From Hemiscyllium ocellatum (lineage: Eukaryota): a DNA stretch of 64,000 nucleotides. Each line of letters starts with the position of its first letter. Within the stretch, counting starts at the first letter, position 1. A model generated the notes under the pieces. The model saw nothing but the letters and a program-made list of their open reading frames with translations, searched no databases and was not told the DNA's origin. Below are positions 5,302 through 36,664 of this stretch, piece after piece. Position numbers and translations under genes: made by a program. Location of the stretch: positions 19,116,341-19,180,340 of the forward strand of contig NC_083409.1 of assembly GCF_020745735.1 (NCBI RefSeq), given 5' to 3'.

Positions 5302-5336
5302 TCAGTCTGAGCTTGGTTCCTTTACCGAACGTGTAC
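5302..5336 (-). CDS. IGKJ: Ig kappa J segment 1 (YTFGKGTKLRL-S)
   Basis: FGxG motif, 35 nt, followed by the GTAAGT donor and preceded by the 23-RSS. Confidence 0.96.
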
Positions 5337-5375
5337 CACAGTGAGAGCTCCCAGTGCAGAGGCTGTACAAAAACC
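5337..5375 (+). other. 23-bp-spacer RSS of J1
   Basis: CACAGTG(5337-5343)-agagctcccagtgcagaggctgt(23)-ACAAAAACC(5367-5375), facing the V1 RSS. Confidence 0.98.
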
Positions 5376-5806
5376 TCAGCTCTCTGCTTCCCTCTTATCA
5401 CTGTCAACCTCTCTCTGTCTCTGTCTGTCTCTCACTCACTCTCACCCTCTCCCTGCCCCTCTCTGTCTCTCCCTCATTCATGTGTCTTTCTCTCTCTGTC
5501 TCTCTGGGTCGTTTCCAGCTGGGCTCGGGAGGTTGGTGAAATTTATTTTTCGATGTTAAATCTTGCAGCAGGTTTTCACATGTGGCTATAGAGTGTAAGA
5601 GGGAAACTAGAGGCCTTCAGTGAGTGTTGAAACACCACAGGGATTGGAGTGTGTCGTGGACAGTGGCAATCCCAGTTTGAGGTAATTTGATCAGCTTCAT
5701 TTAGATCTAACTGGATATGTCAGTTCAGGTGGTGGGACAGTGTGTCCATTATCATACATTTTATGTAACTGTGGGATGTGTCAGGAGGTAGTGCTTTATG
5801 TATTGA

Positions 5807-5834
5807 GGTTTTTGTACAGCTCTGTGTCACTGTG
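5807..5834 (-). other. 12-bp-spacer recombination signal sequence of V1
   Basis: Minus strand CACAGTG-acacagagctgt(12)-ACAAAAACC, perfect consensus. Confidence 0.98.
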
Positions 5835-6133
5835 TCGAGGGGAGCTGTAAACTTGCTGACAGTAATAGTCAGCGACATCCTCATTCTGAACGTTGCTGAT
5901 TTTCAGGGTGAAACTGGTCCCTGATCCACTGCCGGTGAATCGATCGGAGACTCCTGTGAATCGATTTGTTGCATAATAGATCAGGAGAGAGGGTTTCTGA
6001 CCTTCTCGCTGCTGGTACCAGTTAACATAGTTGCTAACAGATTGACTGGCCGTACAGGTGAGTGTTGCGGTCTGGTCCAGTCCCACTGACAGCACTGGGG
6101 GAGACTGGGTCATGCTGATGTCCCCACTGATAC
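5835..6133 (-). CDS. IGKV: Ig kappa V segment 1, unrearranged ([23 protein letters not shown]...[15 protein letters not shown]...[15 protein letters not shown])
   Basis: Acceptor CCCTCAG| at 6134; open frame with both Ig cysteines, WYQQ and YYC; ends directly at a CACAGTG heptamer. The sequence type matches shark NS4/kappa V. Confidence 0.97.
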
Positions 6134-6319
6134 CTGAGGGGTCAGAGAGAAACACAGTGAAGTCAGAACTGTCACAGAAAGAGCCTGTCAAATGAGAGAT
6201 TATTGGAGACACTGAGCACTCCTCTAGTTTCAGTATTTTCCCTTCAATCACAAGTCAGTGGAATTGGAGTGAAATGGAGAGCAGGGAAAGATTCAAGGTG
6301 GAAGGAGAGAGATTTGTAC

Positions 6320-6368
6320 CTGCGACACAGAATGCCAGGGCCCAGATCAGCTGGATGTGTGAAATCAT
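6320..6368 (-). CDS. IGKV: Ig kappa cluster 1 leader exon (MISHIQLIWALAFCVA-G)
   Basis: ATG at 6368, 49-nt hydrophobic exon ending G|GTACAA (phase 1 donor); near-identical to the cluster 2 leader. Confidence 0.93.
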
Positions 6369-6428
6369 GGTGTGTGCTCCTGTCCCTGTGCCTGGTTCCA
6401 GATAAACTCTCCCTTCACTGGACTCTGC

Positions 6429-6520
6429 TTTATAAAGCTGCAGCCTGTGAGAGTCTGACTGGGTGTTCCTCAGTATGTAAATGGCATCAGGCAGAGAGAG
6501 CCACGTCCTCACACTTCCTC
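6429..6520 (-). promoter_or_regulatory. V1 promoter: TATA (6429-6436), variant octamer ATTTACAT (6475-6482), PU box GAGGAAGT (6513-6520)
   Basis: Motifs read directly, with the same spacing as in cluster 2 (TATA about 60 bp before ATG). Function is inferred from known Ig V promoters. Confidence 0.75.
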
Positions 6521-7574
6521 TTCTCTCTCTTTCTATCTCACTCTCTCTGTCTCAGAGTCATTGATGTGAACAGCAGTGAATGAGGCCATTTGGCCCATTG
6601 TGTCTGTGCTGGTAAACAAAGATCTGATGACACTAATCCCATCCTCCAGCTCTTGGCCCGTTACCCTGGGAGCTACAGCAACACAAGGGAATATCTAAAC
6701 ACTGCTCCAATGTCACGAGAGTTTCTGACTCAACCAGCCTTTCAGGCAGTGAGTTCCAGACTCCCACCACCCTCTGGGTGAAAACATTTCTTCTCAACTC
6801 TCCTCTCACTCTCCAACTCGCCTGGCCATGGACTCACTCGTGTTCAGAACGATGAGAGGGGATCTGATTGAAACATATAAAATTGTAACAGGGCTGGGCA
6901 GGGAGGAGGTTTCCCCTGGTTGGGGAGTCTGGAACCAGGGGACACAGGCTCAGGGGGATACAGGGTAGACCATTTCGGACTGAGATGAGGAAACATTTCT
7001 TCACTCAGAGAGTGGTCAACCTGTGGAATTCGCTACCACTGAAGGCTGTGGAGGACAAGGAACTGAATATATTCAAGAAAAAGAGAGAGATAATTGTTTT
7101 GCATTTTAACAGCTTGAAGAGAATGGGGAGAAGGCAGGAATATGGCTTTGAGAGAGAGGATCAGCCATAGATCATAGAATGCCTACAGTGTGGAAACAGG
7201 CCATTTGGCCCGACAAGTCCACACTGACCCTCGAAGAAATGATGACATTCAAAAATTGATACAGCCATGATCATACTGAATGACAGAGCAGACTCAAAGG
7301 GCCGAATGGCCTACTGCTGCTCCAAGTTTCTACGTGTCCGTGTCTGTGTTACCTTCGATCTCTGTACCAGATTATGAAGTCCTTTACTCATGTCAAATGT
7401 GCCATCCTACCCAACCTGTCACTGTCCTGAATAATCCTATCCCTCTCTATCAGGTCCCTTTTAAGCCTTCACTGCTCAAAGCTCACATTCAGGCAGCATC
7501 CTGGGAAATCTCCCTGTACCCTCTCAGGTACAATCACATTCTTCCCAGAGTGTGGTGACCAGGACCTGTCCCTC

Positions 7575-7653
7575 TCTCTCTTTCTCTGATTCACATCTGC
7601 CATTTCTTTCTCTCTACCTCTATCTCTCTCTCCCAATGTTAATCTCTTTCATG

Positions 7654-7716
<63 letters not shown>

Positions 7717-8330
7717 CACACACACACTCACTCTGTCTCATAGCCACATTCTCCAACTCACTGATGCTTTCTGACTACATCTTATCATCTGTTTCGCCAT
7801 CTCTCACTGTCTCTGTTACTCGCTCCCTCTCTCACTTCATTTAAAAGCCTCCAATTGTTATCTGTCACTCTCTATTCCTCCCTCTTTCTCTCTCCTTCCC
7901 TCTCTACCTCCCAATTTACAGTCTCTCTCCCTCTCTCTCTGTCATTATAAATCTACCCATACTCATCTCTCTCTCTCACACTCAACCCTACCCTCCCTCT
8001 CAACTCTCTTCATGCTTAGTCTCACACCCATCCTGTCTCTCACTCTCTCTCTCTCTCCTTGTCTCTTTGTCTCTCTCCATCCCTCTCAGTCACACTGTCT
8101 CACATTTTGTTTCTCTCTCTATCCCTCAACCTCACCATTTCTACCTCCCTCTACCTCTCTCTTGGTCCCCTCACATATCTTACACCGTATCAGATGCTCG
8201 TCCCTCTATCTCTCTCTCTCTCATTCTTTCTTTCTTTCTCTCTCTCTCTCTCATACACACACACACACACACACACACACTATTTTTCCCTCCATCTCTC
8301 TCTCTGCCTCACTGCTCTCTCTTTCTGACA
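7575..8330 (+). repeat. CT-rich low-complexity tract with (CT)n(CA)n microsatellites; mirror GA-rich tract at 34150-34500; other (CT/AG)n runs at 16620-16660 and 56240-56272
   Basis: Read directly. Confidence 0.9.
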
Positions 8331-9199
8331 GTGTCCTGGGTGGTGACAGTTGAATGCAGGATAAATCTCCCTCTGCTCTGTCCCACTAATGGATGTTAAC
8401 ACTTGACCCCTGTCTTCTCCTGGAGGAAGGCCCTATTTCCACGTTGACCAGGGTTTGGCCTCTCTCAGGAAGATGGACAGATTCTGGTCAAATGAAGGGC
8501 AGTTCTGTGCTGTTCTGTGCTGTTGGCCTATTCTCACTGGGGACTGATTTGGACACAAACCTCATTCTGTGAAGGCCTAGCAGAGAGAGGAGATCCTCAG
8601 ATCATCAGCGTGAGTTGGAGGGACAGGACAGGCTCTGACCCACTGACCCATTCACAACATATTCCAATCCCTTCCCCTCTCCTTCCCCTCTCCTTCCCCT
8701 TCCACAGTCAGTCTTGTCTGAAATGGAGTGGTCCCTTCCCTGTCTCACACCAAGGAGGAGATGAACAGATATTTAATGGGTAATGGGTTAAAGGATGATG
8801 GAGAGTGGGCAGGAAAGTGGAGTTGAGTCTGAGATGGGATCAGCCATGATTGTATTAAATGGTGGAGTGGGCTTGAGGAGCTGAAATGCCTGCTCCTGCT
8901 CCTAGTTCTTATGGTCCTCCACCCTCTCCCCCATCCCTCTTACTGCAACTTTGTGAACATTCTTGGAATGTTTGGACATTGAAGGCGCTATGTGAATTCA
9001 AGATTGGTGTGGATTCAATGTGGGGACAGAATTGTGCACGGGCTGTGATAGCTCCTGCGGTTGAATATCCTGCTGGCAGGCTTCCGCCTTCCATATACAG
9101 AATGGGGAAGTGGGGGAGGTCGGAATGTACTGCCGGGGTACACGGCGCTGTCCTCTAGCAATGTGGTTGACTCTCTAGTGCCCTCTGAAATGGCCGAGC

Positions 9200-10480
9200 A
9201 AGGCTCTCAGTTGTGTCAATTATGACAATGTTTCAACAAAGAAATGAGACCGGACGGGCCACAGGCATCGATCTAGACACCGAAAAGACAATGACAGAAA
9301 CAGCCCTGTCTACCCTGCTCCATCCTCCTTACTGACATCTGGGAGCTAGTGCCAAATTCAGGAGAGCTGTCTTACAGATGACTCAAGCAACAGCCTGACA
9401 CAGTCATACTCACAGAACCATACCTTACAGACAATGCCCCAGACACCACCATCACTGTCCCTGCATGTGTCCTGTCCCACTAGAAAGGAAGACCCAACAG
9501 AGCTGATGACACAGTGGTCTACAGTCAGGAGGGAGTTGCCCTGGGAAGTCTCAAAGTTGGCTCTGGACCCTGTGAAGACTCATGAAACTAAGTTAAAAAT
9601 GGGCGAGGAAACCTCCTGGTGATTACAAGATATCTTGCTCCCTTGGCTGATGAATCAGTCTCTCCTGGATGTTGAACAACATTTGGAGGAAGCACTGAGG
9701 GTGATGACAGCAGAGAGTGTACTCTGGGTGGGGGGTTTCAATGTCCACCACTGAGAGTGGCTCGGCAGCAGCATTACTGATCGAGCTGGTTGGTTCCTCA
9801 TGGATGTAGCTGAGGGACTGGCTCTGCAGCTGGAACCAAAAAGATGGAAAAAGATGCTTGACCCCATCCTCACCAATCTTGTGGCTGTAGATGCATCTAT
9901 CCTTGACAGTATTGGTAAGAGTGACCATCAACACAGTCCTTGTGGAAACAAAGTCTGACCTTCACATTGAGAATCCCCTCCATTGTGTTGTGTGGTACTA
10001 TCACCGTACTAAATAGGACAGACTCCGAACAAATATTGCAACTCAAGGCAAACTCGTAAATGAGGATGATTGCCAAAGATTGCACAATGTTCAGCACTAT
10101 TCTCAACTCCTCAGATACTGAAGCAGTCCACGTGCAAATGCAACAATATCTAGACAATATCCAGGTTTTGTCTGAGAAGTGACATTTCCCATTGGTGCCA
10201 TGCAAATGCCAGCCAATCACCATCACCAATAAGAGACAATCTTAACATCGCCCCTTGACAATCAATGCTATTACCATCACTGAATCCCTACTATCAACAT
10301 TCTTGAGGTGCCATTGACCAGAAACACAACTGGATTCACCAAAGAAACACAGTGGTTACAAGAGCAAGTTAGAGGCTAGGAATACTGCATCGAATAACTC
10401 CCCTCCTGATCCCCGCAAAGCCTGTCAACCAAGTCAGGAGTGTGAGCAAATACTCCCCACTTGCCTGGACAGGTGCAGCT
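9200..10480 (+). mobile_element. Second non-LTR family, APE endonuclease region with internal deletions
   Basis: KQQPDTVILTE.YLTDNAPDTTIT.P and VLWVGGFNVHH-type endonuclease remnants; a related independent fragment lies at 30650-31250. Confidence 0.7.
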
Positions 10481-11584
10481 GCAACAACATTCATAGATTG
10501 ATAGTGTCACAGAGTCATACAGCACAGAAACAAACCCTTCAGCCAAACTTCTACATGCTGACCAGGTTTTCTGAAGTGAACTCATCTTATTTGCCTGCAT
10601 TTCACACATATCCCTTGAAACCTTTCCTATCTATGTCTATTGTATCCTATGTCTTTCTTATCCACTCAAAAAGCTTGATACCATCCAGAGCAAAGCAAAC
10701 TCCTTGATTGTCATCACATTCTCAAAGTTTTCAAACTCACCGTCACTAATGCTCCATAGCAGCAGTGTGTATTATCGATAAGAAGCACTGCAGAAATTCA
10801 TCACTGATCTTCAGATAGCACCTTCCAAACCCATGGACAAAAATAGAAAGTGCTGAAAAAGCTCAGCAGGTCAGGCAGCATCTGTGAAGAGAAATCAGAA
10901 TTAACATTTCGGGTTGAGCATGAAATATTAACTCTGATTTCTCTTCACAGATGCTGCCAGACCTGCTGAGCTTTTTCAGCACTTTCTATTTTTATCTCGG
11001 ATTTACAGCATCTGCAGTTCTTTTGGTTTCCCTCCAAACCCACGTTCACTTCCGTTTAGAACAAGAGCAGCAGATACATGGGAACACTGTGAGCTGCAAG
11101 TTCCCCTCGAAAAAGCTTAGCATCCGGACTTGGAAATATGTCGCTGATCCCTCAGCCTTGCTGGGTTAAAATGCTGGCATTGTGGGTCAACTTACAGCTT
11201 GTGGACGACAACAATTCAAGATGGCAGCTTCCCACCACCTTCTCCAGGGCAACTAGGGACAGGGTAAAAAATGTTGGCCCAGCCGGTGAAGCCCACTTCC
11301 CACAAGTGAATATGCAAAACCAAATGAAGTGTTCCTCAGGAGGGGAGAGGGAATGTTCAGGATCCTGAACTCCATTTCCCAGCCCAGGCAGTTTGTCTCC
11401 CAATGAATGAATGAGATGCCAATTTGAAGCCCAGGTTCAGGGCAGTCTCACTCTGTGGACATGAGGTCTATAAGAAGGAATTGGAGATTGAGCTATAAAG
11501 GAAAGATTTGCTGGGTTACGGGGAGAGAGGGGGGAGCAGTGGGACTAACTGGATCATTCAAAGGCATGATGGGCTGAATGGCCT

Positions 11585-11960
11585 CCTCCTGTGCTGTCAG
11601 TTTCCAGGGAGTGCAGACAGTTCACAGTTTTCTCCCGTCTCAGTAACAAACGTCCAGCTGCTCTGAGCTCCTTCTTTCACTTCCTCTGTTGGTGAAGTTT
11701 CAACCTTGTGATCTGACAGCCTTTGCAGTTATTTTTTACACTGGGGCTTTCTGTTGTGGTCAGAATCTCTAATAATAAGTGCCCAATCAGTGACAATCAC
11801 AGCAGCTAAGAGCTGTCAGGACTGAGGAGCCAGGCTCACTGGGAAACACATTGGGAAGATCAAAGCCATCCCCTTCAGCTCCTGGTACAAGCTCCATCCC
11901 TCTCCCTGAGCACTGTCTGCTGCTCAACCAGACTCTTTACAACTTTGGCCTCATCTTTGG
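11585..11960. promoter_or_regulatory. Candidate lymphoid enhancer ~5.2 kb upstream of V1
   Basis: About 95% identical (hand count) to revcomp of 30135-30515. Holds E-box CAGCTG 11655-11660, EICE (GGAAGTGAAA on minus) 11675-11684, Runx TGTGGT 11755-11760 and MEF2 CTAATAATAA 11769-11778. Confidence 0.55.
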
Positions 11961-13089
11961 GGCTGATTTGAGGCCCAAATCCTCCACATCACAATTATCA
12001 GCCACTGAAAATCTCAACCATGTTTTTGTGACCATTCCAATATTATCTAGGCCCACATCACAGCCACTGCCTTCCGTAAACATCAGCTCATCCCAAACTC
12101 TGCTGTCTATGTTCAAACTCACTCCAAGTCCACTCCATACCCCTGCCCACACCTCCCCATCACACCATAACCACCACAATCCTCACTGACTGACATAAGC
12201 TCCTGGTCCAGGAGCACCTCGATTTTCAAATCTCATCCTTGTTCTCAATCTGCTCCCTGTTCTTCCACCCTCCCTATCTCTGTGACCTCCTCCAAGCTGC
12301 CTCACTCAGTGTGATCAATAATCTTGGATATATGGCTCTCTGTTTCTTCATCCAAATCATTGAGAATTATCGTGAAAAGCTGAGGTCCCAGCACAGATCC
12401 CTGGGAATACCACTACTCACATCTGGCTCAATGGAACACACACACGTTATCCTTCCTCTCTGTCTCCTAGACAGACCCATTCCTGACCCAAGGTAAATGC
12501 ATTTCTCAAATTCCATCTAATTCCATGATTTGGAGATGCCAGTGTTGGACTGTCGTGTAAATGTTAAAAATCACAGAACACCAGGTTCTAATGCAACAGG
12601 TTTGTTTGGAAGCATTAGCGTTTGGAGCGCTGCTCCTTCATCAGATGGTTGTGGAGTGTAAGATCTGAATCAATGTTTCTTTTGTGGAACATTCTTAAAT
12701 GTCTTTTGGAATTCCCTATAGACAATAGCCATCGACATTCCTTATATCCCACACTAGTGATCTCCTAAGAAAGTGTAACCCGGTTAGTTAAGATGTCTGA
12801 ACCTTTGTCAATCCATGCTGATTCTCTCAGACCAGTTCATATTTGTCCGTTATTCTGTCTCTAAAAACAGACTCAATCACTTCCTGACAACAGACATTCA
12901 ATGGAGATGTTCATTGTAATTGAGGCTCGTAAACAGCTAGCACTGACACGAGGGGCTGAACAGCCTCCTCCTGTGCTGGCACCTTCTCTGTCTCCTGGAC
13001 GGAAATATTTTACAGATTAAAAACTAAAGACCAGCAGCAAATTTTAAAATATAAATTAAAAACTCCTCAAATAATTTCCACATACAGGG

Positions 13090-16000
13090 CCAGGCGATGT
13101 GTAGTAATTGTACGATGGGGAAGCTGGTGGAGCCCATTGTAGCTCAGAGTGACCACATCTACAGCAAGTGTTGGTTGCTCAAAGCACTCCAGCTCAGAGT
13201 TGATGAGCTGGAATCTGAGCTTCAAACACTGTGACACATCAGGGAGGGGGAGAGTTACCTGGACATTGTGTTTGGGGAGACAGTCACACCTTGTAGGTTA
13301 AATACTTCAAATTATGGCCAGTGGTCAGGAACAGGCGGGTGTGACCAAAGATAAACAGGTCAATGCAGCCTGGACAGCCTTACAGGTGCCTCAGCTCCTT
13401 GTCCAACAGGAATGAGATACTTGCTCCCTGTGTCAATGAGGAAAAGGATTGTCGAGAGAATGGGCAAATGTAGTTTGAGGATTTTGGTGATAGTGACCAT
13501 AACTCTGGAAATTTCAAAGTCATTATATAAAAAGATCAAGATAGAGCAGAAATTATAATGTCTAAACTGGGGAAAAAGTAGGGATGTGTAGGTTAGGTGC
13601 ATTAGCCATGGGAGATGCTGATTTACAGGGATAAGGTAGGGAGACAAGTCTGGGTGGGATGCTCTTCAGAATGTTGGTGTGGACTCATTGGTCTGAATGG
13701 CCTGTTTCACACTGTATGGATTCTATGATTCGATGACTCCTACGGGCAGTCATTGCTGGCTTGGCCAGAGATGTCCATTTCCTATGAATGAACGAAGGAA
13801 ACCACTGAACCATGGTCCAGGAGGCCACTCAGACTGGGGGAGCACAAAGAAAAGAGGGGTCTTGATAATGAGGAAACTGATAGCATCCTTTATGAGCAGG
13901 ATTGAGAGCCCCACATGGTGTGTTGCCTGTCTGGTTTCAAGGTAAGTGCATCTCGAGCCGGCTTTTAAATATAACAGACTTGGGGGGCGGGGAGGTGGGA
14001 GGAGGTGGGGTGCGGGGTTGAGGATCCAGTTGTTGTTGTATGTGTTGGGACCAACAACATCAGCAAAAATCGGCAAAAGCTCCTATTTGGACAATATCAG
14101 GAAAGCTATCAGAAGGATATTGATTAAACAGATGGAGAGAAATAAGAAAGAGGTGAATACAGCATCAGTGCTGAGGAACAGATTCCAGTGAATGGACCAA
14201 ATAAGAGTTCTATATACGAATGCACGGAGTGTAAGGAATAAATACAATAATCTGCAGGAACAAATTCACATTTAAGATTGTGGTATCGGATCAATTACTG
14301 AGCCATAGTTGCAGAATCATTCAGATTGGGAACGATATCTATCGGGTTAGAAGGTTCACAGGATGGATATAGGGAAATGGCAGAAGAGGTGGAGCAGCTT
14401 TATTGATGAGGGAAAAAATGGCTTCAATGGTGAGGGAGGTCATAATGAGGAGAAAACATTCAGTGGGACTGAGGAGCAGGAAAGGATCGAAAACTGTAGT
14501 AGATGTTGGATACAGACCCCCTGACAGCAGCTCTGAGGTGCTGGATTATATAAATGGAGGAATTAGACAAGTGTGTAGCAAAGCCAGTGTATGATTAATG
14601 GTGAAGTTTAACTTTAACTTAGATTGGGAGACAGACAAGCCCTCTGTCAGAAAGGTAGTGAATTGCTGCTGTGTGTCCAGAATAGTTTCCAACAGCAATA
14701 GGTCCTGGATACAACAAGGGGACAAGCAATATTGGAATTAGTAATGAATAATGAGCCAGATTTAGTTCGTAACTACTTGTGCATGAATATTTATCAAATA
14801 GTGATCATAACATGATCTAGTTCAGTGTCGCATTTGAAAGTAAAAAGCATGAATCAGCTGCTAGAGTTTGAGTTTAAGGTAAGGCCGACTTTAACGAGAT
14901 GAGACAGAGACTGTCCACAGTAAACTGGGAAAATCTGCTCATGGGTAAAACAACTGAACAACATTGGGGAATATTTAAAGGAACATTCAACACAAAGCAA
15001 AGCCAGTTTATACCTGAGAGGGAAAAGCGAACAAACAACAATGGTCAATTAGAGAGATAAGGGAAAGAATAAAATGTTTAAAAAAAAGGCATACAGAAAA
15101 GCAAAAAATAAGGACAGATTCCGCTGAATGGGAAGGATACAAAAGGGCCACATATCAGCTTCTAAGAGCTACCAAAGGTGATTCTGAAAGGAACCATGTA
15201 AGGGATAACAAAATCAATAAGGAGAAATGTTACAGTTCCATAAAAGGGAAGCTGGGAGGTCAGTAGCAATGTTGGCCATTAAAGACTGAAAGTGACAATG
15301 GGAAAATGACAGACATGTTAAATAAATACTTTACCTCAAGATTTGCAGTAGAAAAGGAAGAGGACTTGCCTGAAGTCCCAAAGGAATTAACAGAGGATCT
15401 GTGTCAGGGACTGATGAGATTCCCTGCAGTGTGCAAACATGCCTTTTGGCCCAACCAGTCCACACCGACCCCTCCGAAGTGTAACCCATCCAGGCCCATT
15501 TTCCCTCTGACTAATGCACCTAACACTATGGGCAATTTAGTATGGCCAATTCACCTGACCTGCACATCTTTGGATAGTAGGAGGAAACCCGTGCAGACAA
15601 TGTGCAAACTCCACACAGGCAGTTACCCAAGGCTGGAATTGAACCTGTGACTCTGGTGCTGTGAGGCAGCAGTGCTAACCACTGTGTCATCTGAATGAAG
15701 TTAATGTTAATATAACATGTGTAATAAGGAAAATAATGGAACTAAAGAGTGACAAATCCTCAGGACCTGAGGGTGATAAAGTAGAAATAGACCACATTGC
15801 AGACGCCCTGACTATAATCTTTCAGAGTTACCTGGATTCAGGAGTCATACCTCTGAATTGGAAAATTGCAAATTTCACTTCACATTTAACAAGGATGTTA
15901 GAGAAAAGCCAGGGAATTACAGGTCACTGAGCCAGCGTTTGTGGTGTGGAAATTGTTGTAGTCTATAATCAAGGATGGGGGTAACTGAAGACCTTGAAAA

Positions 16001-16623: not shown

Positions 16624-16662
<39 letters not shown>

Positions 16663-23449: not shown

Positions 23450-25410
23450 AATAACTCCAGGAAAGGCAAGAGAGGTAGGCAAGTAGTGCAGGAGTCTTCT
23501 GTGGCTATTCCCATTTCAAACAAGTATGCTGTTTTGGAAAATGTAGGGGGTGATGGAAACTCAGGGGTACTTAGCATGAGCAGCCAAGTTTCTGGTATTG
23601 ACATTGGCTCTAATGTAATGGGAGGTATGTTGGGTTCCAAACAATCGACTGTGTTAGGGGACTCTCTAGCCCGAGGTACTGACAGACATTTCTGTGACCA
23701 GCAGTGAAAAATCAGAATGGTGTTTTGCTTTCCTGGTGCCAGGATCAAGGATGTCCCCGTGAGGGTGCAGAATGTTCTTAAGGTGGAGAGGGACCAGCAG
23801 GAGGTCATTGTACACTTTGGAACCAACAACATGCGGCACGGTGGCACAGTGCTTAGCACTGCTGCCTCACAGCGCCAGAGACCTGGGTTCAATTCCCGAC
23901 TCAGGCGACTGACTGTGTGGAGTTTGTACGTTCTCCCCGTGTCTGCGTGGGTTTCCTCCGGGTGTTCCGGTTTCCTCCCACAGTTTAAAGATGTGCGGGT
24001 CAGGTGAATTGGCCATGCCAAATTGCCCGTAGTGTTAGGTAAGGGGTAAATGTAGGGGTATGGGTGGGTTGCGCTTCGGCGGGTCGGTGTGGACTTGTTG
24101 GGCCAAAGGGCCTGTTTCCACAATGTAAGTAATCTAATCTAATCTAAACATAGTAAGGGAAAAGGTTGAGATTCTGAAGGGATATTGCAGAGAGTTAGGC
24201 AGGAATTTAAAAAGGAGGTCCTCAAGAGTAGTCATATCTGAATTACTCCTGGTGCTATGAGCCAGTGAGGGCAGGAATAGGAGGATAGAGCAGATGAATG
24301 CATGGCTGAGGAGCTGGTGTATGGGAGAAGGATTCACATTTTTGGATCTTTGGAAGCTGTTTTGAGGTAGCAGTGACCTGTACAAAAAGGACAGATTGCA
24401 CCTAAATTGGAAGGGGACTAATATACTGGCAGGGAGATTTGCTAGAGCTGCTCGGGAGGATTTAACCTAGTAAGGTGGGCGGGTGGGACCCAGGGAGATA
24501 GTGAGGAAAGATTTCAACCTCAGATTGGTAAAGTTGAGAACAAAGACAAGTCAAACAGTCAGGGCAGGCGAGGACAAAGCAGAGAACAAGGTAAGACTGA
24601 TAAATTAAACTGCATTTATTTCAATGCAAGAGGCCTAACAGGGAAGGAAGATGAACATAGGGCGTGGTTAGGAACATGGGACTGGGATATCATAGCAATT
24701 ATAGAAATATGGCTCAGGGATGGACTGGACTGGCGGTTTAATGTTCTAGGATACAAATGCTACAGGAAGGACAGAAAGGGAGGCACAAGAGGAGGGAGAG
24801 TGGCATTTTTGATAAGGGATAGCATGACAGCTGTACTTAGAGAGGATATTCCCAGAAGTACATCTAGGGAAGTTATATGAATGGAACTGAGAAGAAAGAA
24901 GGGGATAATCACCCTGTTGGGATTATATTATAGCCCCCCTCCAGTAGTCAATGGGAAATTGAGAAATTTGTAAGGAGATTTCAGTTATCAGTAAGAATAA
25001 TGGGGTCGTTATAGTAGGGGATGTTAACCTTCCAAATATAGACCGGGACTGCCATTGTGTTAAGGGTTTAGATGGAGAGGAATTTGTTAAGTGCGTACAA
25101 GACAATTTTCTGATTCAGTATGTGGATGTACCTACTAGAGAAGGTGCAAAGTTCGACTACTCTTGGAAATAAGGCAGGGCAGGTGACTGAGGAGTCAGTG
25201 GAGGACCACTTTTGGTCAGCGACCATAATTCTATTCATTTTAAAATAGTGATGGAAAAGGATAGACCAGATCCAGAAGTTGAAGTTCTAAATTGGAGGAA
25301 GGCTAATTTTGCCAGTATCAGGCAAGAGCTCTGAAAAGCTGATTGGGGGCAGTTGCTCGCAGGTAAAGGGACAGCTGGAAAATGGGAAACCTTCAGAAAT
25401 GAGATAACTT
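23450..25410 (+). mobile_element. CR1 LINE fragment (ORF1 SGNH-esterase and APE endonuclease)
   Basis: VLGDSLARGTDRHFC, CFPGARIKDV, HFGTN, YFNARGL motifs; interrupted by a V-SINE. Confidence 0.85.
23833..24146 (+). mobile_element. tRNA-derived V-SINE (shark HE1-type), complete, 5-bp TSD AACAT
   Basis: A box TGGCACAGTGCTT, B box GGTTCAATTCC, V-domain, (AATCT)n tail; TSD 23828-23832 and 24147-24151. Confidence 0.88.
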
Positions 25411-25759
25411 AGAACATAGAACATAGAACAATACAGCACAGAACAGGCCCTTCGGCCCACGATGTTGTGCCGAACATCTATCCTAGATTAAGCACCCATC
25501 CATGTACCTATCAAATTGCCGCTTAAAGGTCACCAGTGATTCTGACTCTACCACTCCCACGGGCAGCGCATTCCATGCCCCCAAAACTCTCTGGGTAAAG
25601 AACACACCCCTGACATCTCCCCTATAACTTCCACCCTTCACCTTAAATTTATGTCCACTTGTAACACTCCATTGTACCCAGGGGAAAAGTTTCTGACTGT
25701 CTACTCTATCTATTCCTCTGATCATCTTATAAATCTCTATCAAGTCACCCCTCATCCTT

Positions 25760-28700: not shown

Positions 28701-29280
28701 TATTAGAATTATATCAGCCTTTGGCTTGGCCACATTTGGAATACTGCGTACAGTTCTGGTTGCCACATTACCAGAAAGATGTGGATGCTTTGGAGAGGGT
28801 GCAGAGGAGTTTCACCAGAATTGCCTGGTATGGAGGGCACTAGCTATGAAGAGAGGCTTAGTAGATTAGGATTATTCTCATTAGAAAGTCGAACATTGAG
28901 GGGGGACCTGATTGGGGTCTACAAAATCATGAGAGGTATAGACAGGATGGATAGCAAGAAGCTTTTTCCCAGAGTGGGGGACTCAATTGCTCTGGGTCAT
29001 GAGTTCAAAGTGAGAGTGGAAACATTGAAAGGAGATATGCGTGGAAAGTTCTTCACACAGAGAGTGATTGGTCCTGGAACACGTTGCCAGTGGAGGTGGT
29101 AGAGGCAGGCACAATAGCATCATTCAAGATATATCTAGATAGATACATGGATGGACAGAGAGCAAAGGGAGATAGACCCTTGTAAAATTGATGACAGATT
29201 TAGATGGAGGATATGGACCAGTGCAGGCTAGTAGGGCCGAAGGGCCAGTTCTTGTGCTGTAATTTTCATTGCTCTTTGTT
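25760..29280 (+). mobile_element. Near full-length but decayed CR1 LINE (esterase, endonuclease, RT, 3' end)
   Basis: HVGTDDIG esterase, CFNVRSV endonuclease, YMDFRNAFDKV RT and standard 3' region; many stops. Confidence 0.85.
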
Positions 29281-30134
29281 CTTTGAACTGAGGAAGCTCT
29301 AAGGAACAGAGTGATCTTGGGGTGCTTCTCCACTGATCCCTGAATATGGCAAGACAGGTTAACAGAGCAGTTATGAAGGCATAGGGGACACTTGCCTTTG
29401 TCATGTCAGGTATCGGTTTTAAAAGCAGGAGGATATGCTGCAGTTAAGTAGAACATTGGTGAGGCCACAGCTGGAGTACTGTGTGCAGTTCAGGTCACCA
29501 CACTGTAGGAAAGATGTGATTGCACTGGATGGGGCGCAGAGGGGAATCACCAGATGTTGTGTGGGATGGAAACTCTCAGTGATGAAGAGAAATTGGATCA
29601 GCTCGGGTTGTTTTCTTCAGAGCAGAGAAGGTGGAGGGGGGACCTGATCGAGGTGTATACGGTTATGAGGGGAATGGACAGGGAGGAGAGAAAGCAGCTG
29701 TTCTCCTTCTTGGGAGGGTCAATAACAAGTTGGCTCACATTCAATGTCAAAGATAGGAGGTTTCAAGATGTTTTGAGGAAAGTGTTTTTTACCCAGAGGG
29801 TGGTGGGGGTCTGGAATGCACAGCCTGGGAAAGTAGTTGAGGTGGGAAACCTCACAAACTTTAAAAAGTACTTGGTGGTGAACAGTTGAAATATCATAAC
29901 ATTCAAGCTATGGGCCACATGTTGGAAACTGGGATGGTATAGTTTTAGTGTAGTTTGGCTGGTACACAGTTAATGGGCTGAAGGGCCTCTTCTACACTGT
30001 GTGATTTTATGATTCTGTTGTGTGCAGTTTTGGTTTCCTTATCTGAGGAAGGATGTTCTGGCTGTGGAGGGAGGACAGCGAAGGTTTACCAGACTGATTC
30101 CTGGGAGGACAGCATTTAGATCTGATGAGAAACT

Positions 30135-30515
30135 GGATTGGTGAGGCCAAGTTTGTAAAGAGTCTGGCTGAGCAGCAGACAGTGCTCAGGGAGAGGGATG
30201 GAGTTTGTACCAGGATCTGAAGGGGATGGCTTTGATCTTCCCAATGTGTTTCACAGTGAGCCTGGCTCCTCAGTCCTGACTGCTCTTAGCTGCTGTGATT
30301 GTCACTGATCGGACACTTATTATTAGTGATTCTGACCACAGTAGAAAGCCCCAGTGTAAAAAATAACTGCAAAGACTGTCAGATCGCAAGGTTGAAACTT
30401 CACCAAAAGAGGAAGTGAAAGAAGGAGCTCGGAGCAGCTGGATGTTTGTTACTGAGACGGGAGAAAACTGTGAACTGTCTGCGCTGCCTGGAATCTGACA
30501 GCACAGGAGGCTGGT
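30135..30515. promoter_or_regulatory. Candidate lymphoid enhancer ~5.1 kb upstream of V2
   Basis: Mirror copy of 11585-11960: MEF2 30317-30326, Runx ACCACA 30335-30340, EICE GGAAGTGAAA 30411-30420, E-box 30435-30440. Confidence 0.55.
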
Positions 30516-32164
30516 TCTGGGATTTTTCTTTTCAGAAACAGCACAGTGATGGAAAAAAGGACAGTCACTCTCTCACAAACACACACGCCTGCACTCGGAG
30601 ATCAGAAACAGAATCCAGCAGCAGCTCTGTCTCCAAGCTGTGGAACCTGCACAGAATTGTTCCCTCATTCAGTTTTTAACTGGCAGGATAGACCAAGCAG
30701 GGGAGGCAACACAGTAGTGTGTACAGTCGGAAGGGAGTTGTCCTGGGAATCCTCACCATTAACTATGGAATCCATGAAGCCTCATGGCAGCAGATCAAAC
30801 ATGGGGAAGGAAACCTCCTGCTGATTACCACATAGCACCGCCCTCCCCTCCAACCTCAACTGAGCAGTCAGTCCTCCTCCATGTTGACCAACACTTGGAG
30901 GGAGCACTGAGGGTGGGAAGGATGCAGGATATACTCTGAGTAAGGGACTTCAAAATCCACCATCAAGAGCTTCTCAGAAGCATCACTACTGAGCAAGTTG
31001 GTCAAGTTCCACCTGATTCAGCTGCTAGACTGGACCTGGGGCAGGTGGTGAGGGAACCAACATGAGGGAAAACCATACTCACCATCACCCTCACCAATCT
31101 GCCTGCTGCTGGTGTATATGTCTATGACAGTATCAGTAAGGGTGACCACCGCACAGTCCGTGTGGAGACAAAATCCCATCTTCACATTGAGATTGCCTTG
31201 CATTTTGTTGGGCAAGAGATATGGGATGTCAGGAAGAACTTTTTTTAGCAGCAATTGGTAATGACTTGGAAATTAGTGCCCATTCAGGTGAGGCAGGTGA
31301 AGACACTCAGTGATTGCAATGGCAGATTGGATGGGCTCTTGATGGAAATAAACCTGCAAGGCCCTGGATGTCGAGTAGGGGAGGGGGTGGGACTGACTGG
31401 ATTGCTCCATGAAATGACAGCATTTACACACTTAGTCTCACCTTTACACAAAGACAGGGAGAAACAGACAAACCAGTTCACAGAAGTGTTTTCTCAAGCA
31501 AAACACTCTTGAACCAACTCAGAGAACACACCAGTCTAGATTTACTAGAATAAATCAGCAAATCAATGGCAAGGGAACAGCGACCCAAAAGTGTTGGAAC
31601 TGAACAGTATATTCAATATCACAAACAACGAGAGAGGGAGGGATGAAGGGCAGGAAGGTAGAGAGGGTACTCTTAGGGTCTGAAGGCTCTGCTGTCAATG
31701 GTGGGATGGAGGAAGCAACAATGGGCAGGAGACCAGAGACAGAAGGTGGAAGGGGGAGGGAGGGAATGTGAGTCTACAGCAGGACACAGAGTGAGGGGGG
31801 AGGGAGGCCATGGAGGCAATTGGCTGGCAGTGAGGTCAGATTCTGGAACAACTGTAGTTGTGAGACAGGGAAGGGATCGCTCCACATCAGACAAGTTGGG
31901 GTTTATGGAATGTGGCTTCAGGAAGCTGGGAGAGGACATTGAAATCATAGAGTCAGGAGGTGGGATGAGCAGGAATTGGGGTTTCTGTGGTCAAGAGACT
32001 GAGGTAATGCAGAGACAAACAATGTTGTGCAGATTGAAATAAGGGACCTGGGTAATGGACAGGATGTGGGGTTCACAGCTCAGATACTGGACAGTCCGGT
32101 GGGAAGGAGGCCCATGTTTACTGTTTATTGGTCCTATGGGAAGGTGCCCCATGTTTACATCATC

Positions 32165-33410
32165 ATAGAGTCATAGAGGTTTACAGCGTGGGATCAGGCC
32201 CTTCAGCTCAACTCATCCATGCCGACCAAGTTCCCAAAACTGAACTAGTCCCATCTGCATGCGTTTGGCCCAATCCTCTCTAAATCCTTCCTATCCATGT
32301 TCCTGTAAAAATGTCCTTGAAATCTAGTAATTGCACTCCCCTCTACCATTTCCTCTGGCGGCTCATTGCACATACACACCATCCTCTGTGTGAAAAAATT
32401 GTCTCTCAGGCCCCTTCTAATTCTTTCCCCTCTCAACTTAAACATATTCCTTCTCATACTGGACTCTCCTACCCTGGGGAAAAAAAAAACTTTGGCTATT
32501 CACCTTATCTATGGCCCTAATGATTCTATAAACCTGTCTAAGGTCACCCCTCAATCTCCTGCATTCACTGGAAAAATCTCTCGGACTATCCATCCTCGCC
32601 TTGTAATTCAAACTCACCAACCTTGGTAACATCCCTGTTAACCTTTCTTTTATCCAAACCAGTGTAATAACTTCCTTCCTATAGCAGGGTAAATAGGAAT
32701 GTACACAGTGTCCAAATGTAGCCTTACCAATGCCTTGTACAGCTGTAACATGATGTCCCAGCTCCTGTACTCCCTGCTTTGACCAGTGAAGGTGAGCGTG
32801 CCAAATGCCTTCTTCACCATCCTGTCTACCTGTGACACCACTTCCAAGGAACTATGCACCTGTACCCCTCAGTCTCTCTGTTCAACAACACTCCCCATGG
32901 CTCTACCATTAATTATGTAATTCCTGCCCTGGTTTGTCTTACCAAAATGCAACTCCTTGCATTTATTGAAATTAAGCTCCATCTGGATTTGTTGACCCAC
33001 TGACCCAGTTGATGAAGATGACATTGCATTCTTAGATAATCTTCTTACCTGACCACGATGCCAACAATTTTAATGTCAGCCACAAACTTACTGACCATTC
33101 CTGCTATTTTCTCATACAAATTGTTCATGTAAATGATGAACAACAGTGGATCCAGGATCGATTCTTGTGGCAGATGGCTGGTCACTGGCCTCCAGTCTGA
33201 AGATCAACCCTCTCTCACCAGCCTCTGCCTCCTACCATCAGGCCCATTTTATATCCAATTGGTTAGCTCTACCTGGATCCTCTGTGATATAATCTTACTA
33301 AGCAGTCTACAATGGGGAACCTTGTCTAAGGCCTTGCTAAAGTCCATGTCGATGATATGTACTGATCTATCTTAAGCTATCTATTTCTTCAAAAACTCAA
33401 CTATCCACTT
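32165..33410 (-). mobile_element. CR1 LINE 3' half inserted into a ~43-bp minisatellite
   Basis: RT-to-3' end remnants with a (CTATGA) tail at the left edge; the GGAGGCCCATGTTTAC repeat core occurs on both flanks. Confidence 0.75.
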
Positions 33411-33436
33411 GTCACCATTAGAAGGACAAGTGAATA

Positions 33437-33680
33437 GGAGGCCCACATTTACTGGTCTTCTTGGAGTATCCAGTCAGAAGGAGGTCCATGTTTACTGGTT
33501 TCCTTTGGAGAGTCCATAACGAAGGAGGCCAACATTTATTGGAGGCTCAAGCAGGAACAATGCCCATGTTTACTGGTCTCTATTGGGAGCTTCAGTGGGA
33601 AGGAGGCCCATGTCTCTCCATGGGGCACTCTCGTGAACTGACGTCCATGTTTACTGGACTCTGTTGGAGAGTCCAGTGCA
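33437..33680 (+). repeat. Degenerate ~43-bp minisatellite, about 6 units (2 more cores at 32104-32158)
   Basis: Recurring core AGGAGGCCCATGTTTACTGG. Confidence 0.8.
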
Positions 33681-35463
33681 GCGTGAACACCATGGTGGGT
33701 GTGGGGTTCAGTTCCTTTCTGTTGTAACTGTGTGATGGTCCAACCCTCATCCCAGTAAAACACACTGACTCAGAGACTGATCGTGGAAGGGGAAGGACAG
33801 GGGAAGGGATTGGAACATGCTGTGAATGGACAGGATGGGTCAGTGGGTCAGAGCCTGTGCTGTCCCTCCAGCTCACACTGATGGCCTGAGGATCTCCTCT
33901 CTCTGCTGGGCCTTCATGGAATGAGGTTTGTGTCCAAACCAGTCCCCAGTGAGAATAGGGCAACAGCACAGAACTGCCCTTCATTTAACAAGAATCTGTC
34001 CATCTTCCTGAGAGATACCAAAACCTGGTCAATGTGGAAATGGACCTTTACTCCAGGAGAAGACATGCTTCTGGGGTCAAGGGTTAACATCCATTAGTGG
34101 GGCAGAGCAGGGAGAGATTTATCCTGAATTCAACTGTCACCACCTGGGACACTGTGAGAAAGAGAGAGAAGTGAGACAGAGAGAGAGAAATAGAGGCCGA
34201 GTGTGATGCGGAGAACGAGGGAGAAACAGAGGGAGAAATAGAGAGGGGTAGATAACATTTGGAGGCTTTCAATTGAAGTGAGAGATGGAGCGAGTGACGA
34301 AGACAGTGAGAGATGGAGAAAGATTATGAGACGGAGTGAGGAAGCGTGAGTGAGTTGGAGAGAGTGGCTATGAGACAGAGTGAGAGAGAGGGAATATGAG
34401 AGAGATTAACAGTGGGGAGAGAGATAGATGTAGAGAGATCAAAGTAGCAGATGTGAGACAGAAAGGGGAAAAGAGAGAGAGAGAGAGAAAGGTCCTGATC
34501 ACCACATTCTGGGAAGGATGTGATTGTACTTGAGAGGGGGCAGAGGAGATTTCCCAGGATGCTGCCTGGGATGGAGGGTCAGCTATGAGGAAAGACTGGA
34601 AAGGTTGGGGCTGTTTTCCTTGGAGCATTGAAGGTTGAGAGGGACCTGATAGAGAGGTATAAGATAATTGTTGGCAGTGATATGTTGCATAGGAAGGCAC
34701 TTTATACAAGAGTAAAGGACTCAATAACCAGGGACAGAGATTGAAGGTAACACAGACATGGACACATTGAAACTTGGAGCAGGAGCAGGCCATTCGGCCC
34801 TTTGAATCTTATGTGTCATTCAGTATGATCATGGCTGATCCTCTCTCTCAATGCTGTGCTGCTGCTTTCTCCCCATTTCCTTCATGCTGTTAAAACGCAA
34901 AACAACTCTTTTCTTTCTTGAATATATTCAGTTCCTTGTCCTCCACAGCTGTTTGTGGTAGAGAATTCATCAGGTTGACCATTCTCTGAGTGAAGAAATG
35001 TTTCCTCATCTCAGTCCTAAATGGTCTACCCTGTATCCCCCTGAGCCTGTGTCCCCTCGTTCCAGACTCCCCAACCAGGGGAAACCTCCTCCCTGCCCAG
35101 CCCTGTTACAATTTTATGTGTTTCAATCAGATCCCCTCTCATCCTTCTAAACTCGAGTGAATCCAGGCCCAGTTGAGTTGCAGAGTGAGAGGAGAATTGA
35201 GGAGAAATGTTTTCACAAAGAGTGTGGTGGGAATCTGGAACTCACTGCCTGAAAGGCTGGTTGAGTCACAAACTCTCGTGACATTGGAGCAATATTTAGA
35301 TATTCCCTTGTATTGCTGTAGCCCTCAGGGTAATGGGCCATGAGCTGGAGGATGGGATTAGTGTCATCACATCTTTGTTTACCAGCACAGATACAATGGG
35401 ACAAATGGCCTCATTCAGTGCTGTTCACATCAATCACTGTCTGAGACAAAGAGAGAGAGAGAA

Positions 35464-35560
35464 GAGGAAGTTTGAGGGGTTGACGTGGCTCTCTCTGCCT
35501 GATGCCATTTACATACTGAGGAACACCCAGTCAGACTCTCACAAACTGCAGCTTTATAAA
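35464..35560 (+). promoter_or_regulatory. V2 promoter: PU box GAGGAAGT (35464-35471), TGACGTGG (35481-35488), variant octamer ATTTACAT (35507-35514), TATA (35553-35560)
   Basis: Motifs read directly; the layout mirrors the cluster 1 promoter. Confidence 0.75.
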
Positions 35561-35620
35561 GCAGAACCAAGTGAAGGGAGAGTTTATCAGGAACCAGGCA
35601 CAGGGACAGGAGCACACACC

Positions 35621-35669
35621 ATGATTTCACACATCCAGCTGATCTGGCCCCTGGCATTCTGTGTTGCAG
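35621..35669 (+). CDS. IGKV: Ig kappa cluster 2 leader exon (MISHIQLIWPLAFCVA-G)
   Basis: ATG at 35621, donor G|GTACAA at 35670, 186-bp intron to the acceptor CCCCTCAG at 35855. Confidence 0.93.
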
Positions 35670-35855
35670 GTACAAATCTCTCTCCTTCCACCTTGAATCT
35701 TTAGCTGCTCTCCATTTCACTCTAATTCCACTGACTTGTGACTGAAGGGAAAATGCTGAAAGCAGAGGAATGCTCAGTGTCTCCAACAATCTCTCATTTG
35801 ACAGGCTCTTTCTGTGACAGTTCTGACTTCACCGTGTTTCTCTCTGACCCCTCAG

Positions 35856-36154
35856 GTATCAATGGGGACATCATCATGACTCAGTCTCCCCCGGTGCTGT
35901 CAGTGGGACTGGGCCAGACCGCAAAACTCACCTGTACGGCCAGTCAATCTGTTAGCAATGAGCTTTCCTGGTACCAGCAGCGAGAAGGTCAGAAACCCTC
36001 TCTCCTGATCTATTATGCAACAAATCGATTCACAGGAGTCTCCGATCGATTCACTGGTAGTGGATCAGGGACCAGTTTCACCCTGACAATCAGCAACATT
36101 CAGAATGAGGATGTCGCTGACTATTACTGTTTGCAGGATTACAGCTCCCCTCAA
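35856..36154 (+). CDS. IGKV: Ig kappa V segment 2, unrearranged ([23 protein letters not shown]...WYQQ...[11 protein letters not shown])
   Basis: Open 299-nt exon with canonical Cys/Trp/Cys, ending at a heptamer; 21 nt differences from V1 by hand count. Confidence 0.97.
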
Positions 36155-36182
36155 CACAGTGACACAGAGCCATACAAAAACC
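36155..36182 (+). other. 12-bp-spacer RSS of V2
   Basis: CACAGTG-acacagagccat(12)-ACAAAAACC. Confidence 0.98.
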
Positions 36183-36590
36183 TGAAAGCACACAGAATCA
36201 CCTCCTGTACTGACACATCCACGGTTATATAAAATGCATAATAATGGACACACAGTCCCACCGCCTGAACTGTCATATCCCACAGTTAGTTCTAAATGAA
36301 ACTGAACAAATTACCCCATGCTGGGATTGTCACTGTCCACGACACACTCCAGTCCCTGTGGTGTCTCAATGCTCACTAAAGGCCGCAAGTTTCCCTCTTA
36401 CACTCCATGGCCACATGTGAAGAGCAGCTGCAAGATTTAACAACAAAAAATAAAGTGCACAACCCAGAGGCAGAGACAGAAAGACACATGAATGAGGGAA
36501 AGACTGATAGGGGCAAAAAGAGGGTGAGAGTGATCGACAGACTGGGAGACAAGGAGAGGGTGAGAGTGACAGAGGGAAGCAGAGAGCTGA

Positions 36591-36629
36591 GGTTTTTGTA
36601 CAGCCTCTGCACTGGGAGCTCTCACTGTG
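36591..36629 (-). other. 23-bp-spacer RSS of J2
   Basis: Plus strand GGTTTTTGT-23 nt-CACTGTG; spacer identical to the J1 spacer. Confidence 0.98.
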
Positions 36630-36664
36630 GCTTACGTTCGGTAAAGGAACCAAGCTCAGACTGA
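36630..36664 (+). CDS. IGKJ: Ig kappa J segment 2 (LTFGKGTKLRL-S)
   Basis: FGKGTKL motif, GTAAGT donor at 36665; phase 1 matches the C exon acceptor. Confidence 0.96.

What the first reader, a model, noticed from the sequence alone, without database searches (positions are those of the whole stretch)
5302..36664. Head-to-head kappa clusters only ~30 kb apart allow lossless inversional V/J swapping
Seen: V1-12RSS/23RSS-J1 on minus and V2-12RSS/23RSS-J2 on plus, all four RSS perfect. Geometry: joining V1 to J2 inverts 5835-36629, gives V1-J2-C2, keeps the signal joint, and leaves V2 facing J1 so that V2-J1-C1 can still form by deletion. Known: shark Ig clusters are generally held to rearrange within a cluster, while teleost light-chain loci use inversional joining among closely spaced inverted segments. 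Inference: this pair could give combinatorial diversity or receptor editing unusual for sharks. V1/V2 and J1 (TAC, Tyr)/J2 (CTT, Leu) are distinguishable.
Basis: partly seen in the sequence, partly recalled or inferred. Interest (0 to 1): 0.75.

Follow-up and report, generated by a model that had tools for sequence, protein, structure and literature searches.

The report
Head-to-head shark kappa light-chain gene pair
Two intact, unrearranged shark antibody kappa light-chain mini-genes sit back to back about 30 kb apart, so swapping their V and J pieces by flipping the DNA between them is geometrically possible, but nothing shows it happens, it would add little diversity, it cannot edit a receptor, and the layout recurs across this genome.

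Summary
The window holds exactly four recombination signal sequences (RSS), all with perfect heptamer and nonamer. They flank two intact kappa (type III/NS4) V-J units on opposite strands, which form the arms of an old, roughly 87%-identical inverted duplication.

The geometry is also right. An in-silico V1xJ2 join inverts 5835-36629 (30,795 bp). It places V1 in front of J2-C2 and keeps a heptamer-to-heptamer signal joint. V2 is then left 973 bp from J1 for a later deletional join.

- C1 is not in the window.
- J1 and J2 differ at only three junctional bases, so the combinatorial gain is about one codon.
- Either route gives two attempts per pair.
- No second join can remove or silence a first VJ, so this is not receptor editing.
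- Each J has an equally good V signal about 0.5 kb away, which should out-compete a partner 30 kb away.

No direct test was possible.

This scan had already noted the same layout on other DNA of this genome, probably epaulette shark, and an earlier follow-up called it routine there. The published reviews I could read say shark rearrangement stays within a cluster. Verdict: a real but ordinary pair, with inter-cluster inversion an untested, probably rare, possibility.

The parts
5302..5336 (-). J1 coding segment (YTFGKGTKLRL), followed by a GTAAGT splice donor
5337..5375 (-). J1 23-RSS: perfect heptamer, 23-nt spacer, perfect nonamer
5376..5806 (-). V1-J1 intervening DNA. The coding ends are 498 bp apart, RSS included.
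5807..5834 (-). V1 12-RSS: perfect heptamer, 12-nt spacer, perfect nonamer
5835..6133 (-). V1 exon (V-set, CDR1 [12 protein letters not shown]3 QQVYSSP)
6320..6368 (-). V1 leader exon (MISHIQLIWALAFCVA); the leader intron is 6134-6319
6429..6482 (-). V1 promoter motifs: TATAAA 66 nt and the octamer variant ATTTACAT 114 nt upstream of the ATG
11585..11953 (-). Conserved non-coding block about 5.2 kb upstream of V1, 94.6% identical to its mirror copy. It holds GGAAGTGAAA and CAGCTG and is a candidate enhancer.
30142..30510 (+). Mirror copy of the conserved block, about 5.1 kb upstream of V2
35507..35560 (+). V2 promoter motifs: ATTTACAT at 116 nt and TATAAA at 68 nt upstream of the ATG
35621..35669 (+). 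V2 leader exon (MISHIQLIWPLAFCVA); the leader intron is 35670-35855
35856..36154 (+). V2 exon (V-set, CDR1 [12 protein letters not shown]3 LQDYSSP)
36155..36182 (+). V2 12-RSS, perfect
36591..36629 (+). J2 23-RSS, perfect; identical to the J1 23-RSS at all 39 positions
36630..36664 (+). J2 coding segment (LTFGKGTKLRL), followed by a GTAAGT donor
46518..46846 (+). C2 exon (C1-set). It is 90% identical to the nurse-shark NS4 C region. It has an AG acceptor, is in phase with J2, ends in a TAG stop, and is followed by AATAAA at 47374.
364..15689 (.). Left arm of the diverged inverted duplication (aligned pieces only)
23842..38569 (.). Right arm of the diverged inverted duplication. Mean identity over 5.4 kb of aligned pieces is 87%.

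Best explanation
These are two ordinary, intact, germline-configuration cartilaginous-fish kappa (type III/NS4) light-chain miniclusters. They form the two arms of an old inverted segmental duplication and are therefore head to head, with start codons 29.3 kb apart. Each most probably works as an autonomous V-J-C cassette. RAG joins the V 12-RSS to the J 23-RSS about 0.5 kb downstream in the same cluster by deletion, and the VJ exon is spliced to that cluster's own C exon about 10 kb further on. The opposite polarity makes V1xJ2 or V2xJ1 inversional joining legal under the 12/23 rule. It is probably a rare by-product, not a designed diversification or editing pathway. Shown here: the anatomy, the intactness of the segments, the RSS quality, the geometry and its products. 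Inferred: the preference for intra-cluster joining and the rarity of inversion.
For: Anatomy: there are exactly four RSS, all perfect and all correctly placed. Both V genes are intact, with leader, intron, V-set domain and promoter motifs at matching distances. C2 is a C1-set exon, 90% identical to nurse-shark NS4 and 78% to horn-shark kappa. Old duplication: the arms are 79-95% identical, 87% on average, with only 5.4 kb still alignable. They are interrupted by unrelated inserts such as a reverse-transcriptase ORF. Competition: each J has a perfect 12-RSS partner 475-498 bp away and an equally good one about 30.8 kb away. The J 23-RSS are identical and the V 12-RSS differ at 2 spacer bases. 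No gain in attempts and no editing: the simulation leaves zero RSS after two joins by either route, with both VJ joints retained. Little diversity gain: the J segments differ at nt 2-4 only. Literature: rearrangement in cartilaginous fish is reported as almost exclusively within a cluster (PMC4279169; PMC5192425; PMC3014032; PMC12227049). Recurrence: other windows of this genome carry the same layout (unchecked notes).
Against: No rearranged transcript or B-cell DNA could be examined, so intra-cluster preference is inferred, not shown. Published within-cluster evidence comes mostly from IgH and from other shark species. It was partly explained by clusters being far apart and of one polarity, and neither holds here. 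No consensus CTCF motif lies between V1 and V2, so the motif search gives no sign of an insulator separating the pair. Mouse and human kappa loci, and zebrafish IgL, do use inversional joining over far larger distances (general knowledge).
Confidence: 0.8

Rival explanations
1. Inter-cluster inversional joining between head-to-head partners is a regularly used pathway, accounting for at least about 1% of joins at such pairs. It would make the shark kappa array behave partly like a teleost or mammalian kappa locus and yield V1-J2-C2 and V2-J1-C1 chains.
For: The join is 12/23-compatible with perfect RSS on all four segments. The products are structurally sound in silico, and each V keeps its promoter and upstream conserved block. 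The distance is only 30.8 kb, with no CTCF consensus between the partners. There is a precedent in zebrafish over 81 kb. The classical reasons given for its absence in sharks, distance and same polarity, do not apply here.
Against: An equally good intra-cluster partner lies about 65 times closer. There is no diversity or editing benefit that selection could act on. The window holds no germline signal-joint footprint. Another window's note describes a germline-joined kappa gene whose head-to-head partner is an ordinary unfused cluster, which is the footprint of intra-cluster joining (s1-198116, not checked by me). Published consensus favours within-cluster joining.
Confidence: 0.12
2. The head-to-head orientation is an assembly artefact, either a false inverted duplication or a mis-oriented contig.
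For: Palindromic repeats in multigene arrays are difficult to assemble.
Against: There is no N or gap anywhere in the 64 kb. The arms are only 79-95% identical, with many indels and arm-specific inserts, whereas a foldback or haplotig artefact would be nearly identical. V1 and V2 differ at 21 of 297 nt. The same layout is reported at many other places in the assembly.
Confidence: 0.03
3. Cluster 1 is incomplete or dead because it lacks a usable C1, so the pair offers only V2-J2-C2 and, by inversion, V1-J2-C2.
For: No C exon lies downstream of J1 within the 5.3 kb available.
Against: The J2-C2 intron is 9.9 kb, so by symmetry C1 is expected about 7-8 kb before the window start. A note on the neighbouring window reports two convergent kappa C exons there (s1-207284, unchecked). 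V1, J1 and both their RSS are perfectly preserved.
Confidence: 0.05

Closest known systems
Nurse-shark NS4 / horn-shark type III (kappa) light-chain miniclusters (Lee et al. 2000, PMC2193156)
   Same: A single V with a 12-RSS. A single J with a 23-RSS about 0.5 kb downstream. One C exon. The leader begins MISHIQL. The C region is 90% identical to the nurse-shark NS4-type chain P0027 and 78% to horn-shark kappa. It belongs to a multi-copy family that also has germline-joined members.
   Different: The J-C intron here is about 10 kb. The genomic neighbourhood is now visible: clusters lie in alternating polarity about 30 kb apart. The reviews I could read instead assumed one polarity and large spacing.
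Zebrafish IgL clusters with inversional inter-cluster VJ joining (Zimmerman et al. 2008, PMC3014032)
   Same: Multiple V-J-C clusters on one chromosome. V segments lie in opposite polarity to the J-C of a neighbouring cluster within tens of kb. Inversion would keep all segments and move a V into another cluster.
   Different: In zebrafish, VJ-C cDNAs were mapped to V and J/C of different clusters. Here no expressed or somatic junction has been seen. Zebrafish clusters hold several V and J, and many V have no same-polarity J close by. Here every V has its own J 0.5 kb away.
Mammalian Ig kappa locus: inversional joining and receptor editing
   Same: V 12-RSS and J 23-RSS polarity. Inversion retains the signal joint and the intervening segments.
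   Different: Mammalian editing works because upstream V and downstream J segments remain, and a new join deletes or displaces the old VJ. In this pair one J per cluster and one V per cluster leave no RSS after two joins, and no join removes an earlier VJ.

Membership tests
Cartilaginous-fish Ig kappa (type III/NS4) minicluster | V-set exon with leader, ending in a heptamer-12-nonamer RSS | tested here: met
   V1 and V2: Pfam V-set E about 1e-18; perfect 12-RSS; leader and intron mapped
Cartilaginous-fish Ig kappa (type III/NS4) minicluster | Single J with a nonamer-23-heptamer RSS a few hundred bp downstream of V on the same strand, carrying the FGxGTKL motif and a splice donor | tested here: met
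   J1 and J2 lie 498 and 475 bp from their V coding ends, carry FGKGTKLRL, and are followed by a GTAAGT donor
Cartilaginous-fish Ig kappa (type III/NS4) minicluster | One C1-set constant exon downstream, in phase, similar to NS4/type III C | tested here: inconclusive
   Met for cluster 2: C2 at 46518-46846, C1-set E 4e-23, 90% identical to the nurse-shark chain P0027. C1 of cluster 1 lies outside the window and was not seen.
Cartilaginous-fish Ig kappa (type III/NS4) minicluster | Rearrangement confined to the cluster | not testable with these tools
No somatic DNA or cDNA of this animal was available.
Teleost-type inversional inter-cluster IgL system | V in opposite transcriptional polarity to the J-C of another cluster on the same chromosome, with 12/23-compatible RSS | tested here: met
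Teleost-type inversional inter-cluster IgL system | Expressed VJ-C transcripts whose V and J/C map to different clusters | not testable with these tools
The protein database held only germline gene models for this species.
Kappa-type receptor editing by secondary rearrangement | A secondary V-J join deletes or inverts away the primary VJ, and spare RSS remain after the first join | tested here: not met
   In-silico joins: after V1xJ2 the only remaining legal join (V2xJ1) removes 973 bp of non-coding DNA and leaves V1J2 intact. After V1xJ1, cluster 1 has no RSS left.

The most novel reading that the evidence does not exclude
Shark kappa miniclusters are not autonomous. Head-to-head partners share one open chromatin domain, and RAG joins V of one to J of the other by inversion at an appreciable rate. 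More distant same-polarity clusters might also join by deletion. The 'cluster' array would then function as a cryptic translocon, with real combinatorial V-C shuffling and, through leapfrogging deletions, genuine receptor editing.
Probability: 0.1. Interest if true: 0.75.

Novelty: new member of a known kind. Interest (0 to 1): 0.35.

Why it matters
The textbook view is that shark antibody genes are self-contained cassettes that never mix. Reviews explained this partly by the clusters being far apart and all pointing the same way. This window shows, in contiguous sequence, that neither is true for this pair of kappa clusters, and notes on other windows suggest the same elsewhere in the genome. 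If the within-cluster rule still holds, something else must enforce it, such as proximity of the cognate partner or cluster-by-cluster activation. That makes pairs like this one a clean natural substrate for asking how RAG chooses partners: the RSS are identical and the distances are 0.5 kb versus 30 kb.

Tried and rejected
No transcript or somatic junction was examined.
2. Fetching other clusters or the partner of a germline-joined gene from shark assemblies: the look-up of encoding contigs returned gene spans but no DNA ('file too large') for Chiloscyllium punctatum and Hemiscyllium ocellatum.
3. Looking for rearranged cDNA-derived proteins carrying V1: the protein search gave only germline gene models for this species (P0010 and P0011, 88% identical to V1, mis-spliced across the V-J gap). 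None matches V1 closely.
4. Germline footprint of a past inversion: there is no heptamer-to-heptamer signal joint in the window. Seven 3-mismatch matches were found against 4.1 expected, and none has nonamers.
5. Insulator between the clusters: no CTCF consensus lies between V1 and V2, and one lies at 50956 downstream of C2. This was a consensus search only, so it is weak evidence either way.
6. Extra V, J or C copies or pseudogenes in the window: none were found by tblastn or a J-motif scan.
7. Assembly artefact: rejected because of arm divergence and the absence of gaps.
8. Literature: Hsu 2016 and Zhu 2012, and the DOI I recalled for Iacoangeli 2017, were not held in the library. My recollection that Iacoangeli et al. 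state that shark IgL organisation precludes secondary rearrangements that delete a VJ could not be verified (one search found nothing). I therefore rest that point on my own simulation.
Full report
OBSERVATION

A scan of both strands for CACAGTG-like heptamers with an ACAAAAACC-like nonamer at 11-13 or 22-24 nt, allowing up to two mismatches in total, finds four sites in 64 kb. All four have zero mismatches:
- V1 12-RSS, 5807-5834 (-)
- J1 23-RSS, 5337-5375 (-)
- V2 12-RSS, 36155-36182 (+)
- J2 23-RSS, 36591-36629 (+)

Bare heptamers are common (31 found against 14 expected). Complete RSS occur only where a V or J coding end lies.

V1 has a leader exon at 6320-6368 and a V exon at 5835-6133. 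V2 has a leader exon at 35621-35669 and a V exon at 35856-36154. Both are intact. Each has a 49-nt leader exon, a 186-nt intron, a V-set domain (E about 1e-18) and no stop codons. Each has TATAAA and an octamer variant (ATTTACAT) at matching distances upstream of the ATG.

J1 (5302-5336) and J2 (36630-36664) encode Y/L-TFGKGTKLRL and are followed by GTAAGT.

The window contains no N.

- Only one constant exon is in the window. C2 lies at 46518-46846 (+), is a C1-set exon (E 4e-23), has an AG acceptor in phase with J2, and sits 9.9 kb downstream of J2.
- C1 is not present. By symmetry of the repeat it should lie roughly 7-8 kb before the window start. A note on the neighbouring window reports two convergent kappa C exons there (unchecked).
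- J1 and J2 differ only at nucleotides 2-4 (TAC versus CTT). The remaining 31 nt and all 39 nt of the two 23-RSS are identical.
- Those three bases sit at the coding end, where trimming and additions act. J identity will therefore often be unreadable in transcripts, and the proposed assay must rely on C.

WHAT IT IS

C2 is 90% identical to the C region of a nurse-shark NS4-type chain (P0027). It is 78% identical to horn-shark kappa and 94% identical to another Hemiscyllium ocellatum kappa model. The best V matches, at 88%, are H. ocellatum proteins. These are therefore kappa (type III/NS4) miniclusters, probably of the epaulette shark, with the V-12/J-23 polarity typical of kappa.

The two clusters are the arms of a diverged inverted duplication:
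- 4463-7181 matches 37511-34817 at 88.8%.
- Further pieces run out to 364-1312 / 38569-37629 on the J-C side and to about 15.6 kb / 23.8 kb on the upstream side.
- Mean identity is 87% over 5.4 kb. The rest has been replaced by arm-specific DNA.
- One 369-bp block about 5 kb upstream of each V stands out at 94.6% with sharp edges. It carries GGAAGTGAAA and CAGCTG. Other notes of this scan treat it as a candidate enhancer.

The V exons differ at 21 of 297 nt and 12 of 99 residues, concentrated in CDR1 and CDR3. FR2, CDR2 and part of FR3 are identical.

The interval between the two V genes holds no recognisable host gene. One ORF there has a below-threshold esterase-like match, and the other ORFs of 150 aa or more have no Pfam match.

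GEOMETRY

I carried out the joins in silico.
- Cutting at 5834|5835 and 36629|36630 and inverting the 30,795 bp between them places the V1 coding end against the J2 coding end, upstream of C2.
- The V1 12-RSS heptamer is fused to the J2 23-RSS heptamer at 5807-5873. This is a textbook chromosomal signal joint.
- V1 keeps its promoter and its upstream conserved block.
- V2 now lies on the minus strand at 6310-6606. Its 12-RSS faces the J1 23-RSS.
- A 973-bp deletion then gives V2-J1, after which no RSS remains.

As with the intra-cluster joins, untrimmed blunt joins are out of frame, so normal end processing is needed.

DOES THE GEOMETRY BUY ANYTHING?

Three points follow from the anatomy.
- The number of attempts per pair is two by either route: V1J1 then V2J2, or V1J2 then V2J1.
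- No legal second join deletes, inverts away or otherwise disables a first VJ. After V1J1, cluster 1 has no RSS. After V1J2, the only remaining join removes non-coding DNA. This cannot be receptor editing in the mammalian sense; it could only add a second light chain.
- The added combinatorial diversity is one junctional codon (Tyr versus Leu) plus whatever differs between C1 and C2.

There is thus little for selection to favour.

HOW LIKELY IS IT TO HAPPEN?

All RSS are equally good, so partner choice should depend on access. Each J has its own V signal 475-498 bp away and the partner's V signal about 30.8 kb away.

If contact probability falls with distance to the power 1 to 1.5, the cognate partner is favoured roughly 60- to 500-fold. 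That would put inter-cluster joins at well under about 2% even if both clusters are open together. This is an order-of-magnitude inference from general polymer behaviour, not a measurement.

On the other side:
- No CTCF consensus separates the two V genes. The only match is at 50956, downstream of C2.
- Inversional joining over far larger distances is routine in mammalian kappa loci and documented over 81 kb in zebrafish IgL.

Rare events are therefore plausible.

LITERATURE

- Zimmerman et al. (PMC3014032) attributed the absence of inter-cluster joining in sharks to distance and to uniform polarity.
- I found no paper describing head-to-head kappa clusters in a shark. The library is incomplete, and key Hsu-laboratory papers were not held.

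CONTEXT FROM THIS SCAN (AI notes, unchecked by me)

- The same head-to-head layout has been noted at many other places in this genome, at spacings of 28-52 kb, together with tail-to-tail axes.
- An earlier follow-up on another piece reached the same conclusion as mine and called the layout routine in a roughly 200-copy array.
- One note describes a germline-joined kappa gene whose head-to-head partner is an ordinary unfused cluster. That is the footprint expected from an intra-cluster join. An inversional join would leave a signal joint between the partner's V and J. I could not inspect that DNA.

WHAT COULD NOT BE DONE

- External shark DNA was not retrievable.
- No V1-specific expressed sequence was found in the protein collection.
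- The question of actual use is therefore open and rests on inference.

VERDICT

The functional interpretation is not supported as stated.

This is a well-preserved but ordinary pair of shark kappa miniclusters in an old palindromic duplication. Inter-cluster inversion is legal but probably rare and of little consequence.

The real residual interest is mechanistic. The classical reasons for cluster autonomy, distance and polarity, fail here. Such pairs would therefore be good substrates for testing what does enforce it.

Noticed in passing
window 11585-11953 and 30142-30510: A 369-bp non-coding block about 5 kb upstream of each V is 94.6% identical between the arms and has sharp edges, while the flanks are unalignable. 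It contains GGAAGTGAAA (an Ets/IRF composite-like site) and CAGCTG. It is a candidate per-cluster enhancer and has already been noted by other readers of this scan.
   Followed up: partly
window 53915-63923: A second set of inverted repeats: 53915-54342 versus 63923-63501 at 93.7%, and 56420-58033 versus 62727-61107 at 78%. It lies downstream of C2 and is consistent with a tail-to-tail axis toward a further minus-strand cluster beyond the window end.
   Followed up: partly
window 39627-41018 (-): A 463-aa ORF with a reverse-transcriptase domain (RVT_1, E 1.6e-35) inside the J2-C2 intron. This retroelement insertion helps account for the long (9.9 kb) intron.
   Followed up: partly
window 50956-50968 (+): The only CTCF-consensus match in the 64 kb (CCAGCAGATGGCA). 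It lies about 4 kb downstream of C2, and there is none between the two V genes. This is a single motif match of unknown significance.
   Followed up: no
window 25802-26269 (+): A 155-aa ORF with a weak, below-threshold match to a GDSL/SGNH esterase (E 2e-5). It may be a remnant of an esterase-bearing LINE ORF1. A similar stretch (25410-25760) recurs at 39547-39907 next to the reverse-transcriptase ORF.
   Followed up: no
window 3133-3495 (+) and 37037-37063 / about 4880-4900: Simple repeats: a Gly-Gln-rich repeat ORF in the J1-C1 intron, and mirrored (CAG)n runs about 400 bp downstream of each J.
   Followed up: no
proteins P0010 and P0011 (Hemiscyllium ocellatum RefSeq models): Public gene models for other kappa clusters of this species splice or read across the unrearranged V-J gap. 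One translates the 23-RSS itself. Automatic annotation therefore gives non-physiological proteins for these genes.
   Followed up: partly
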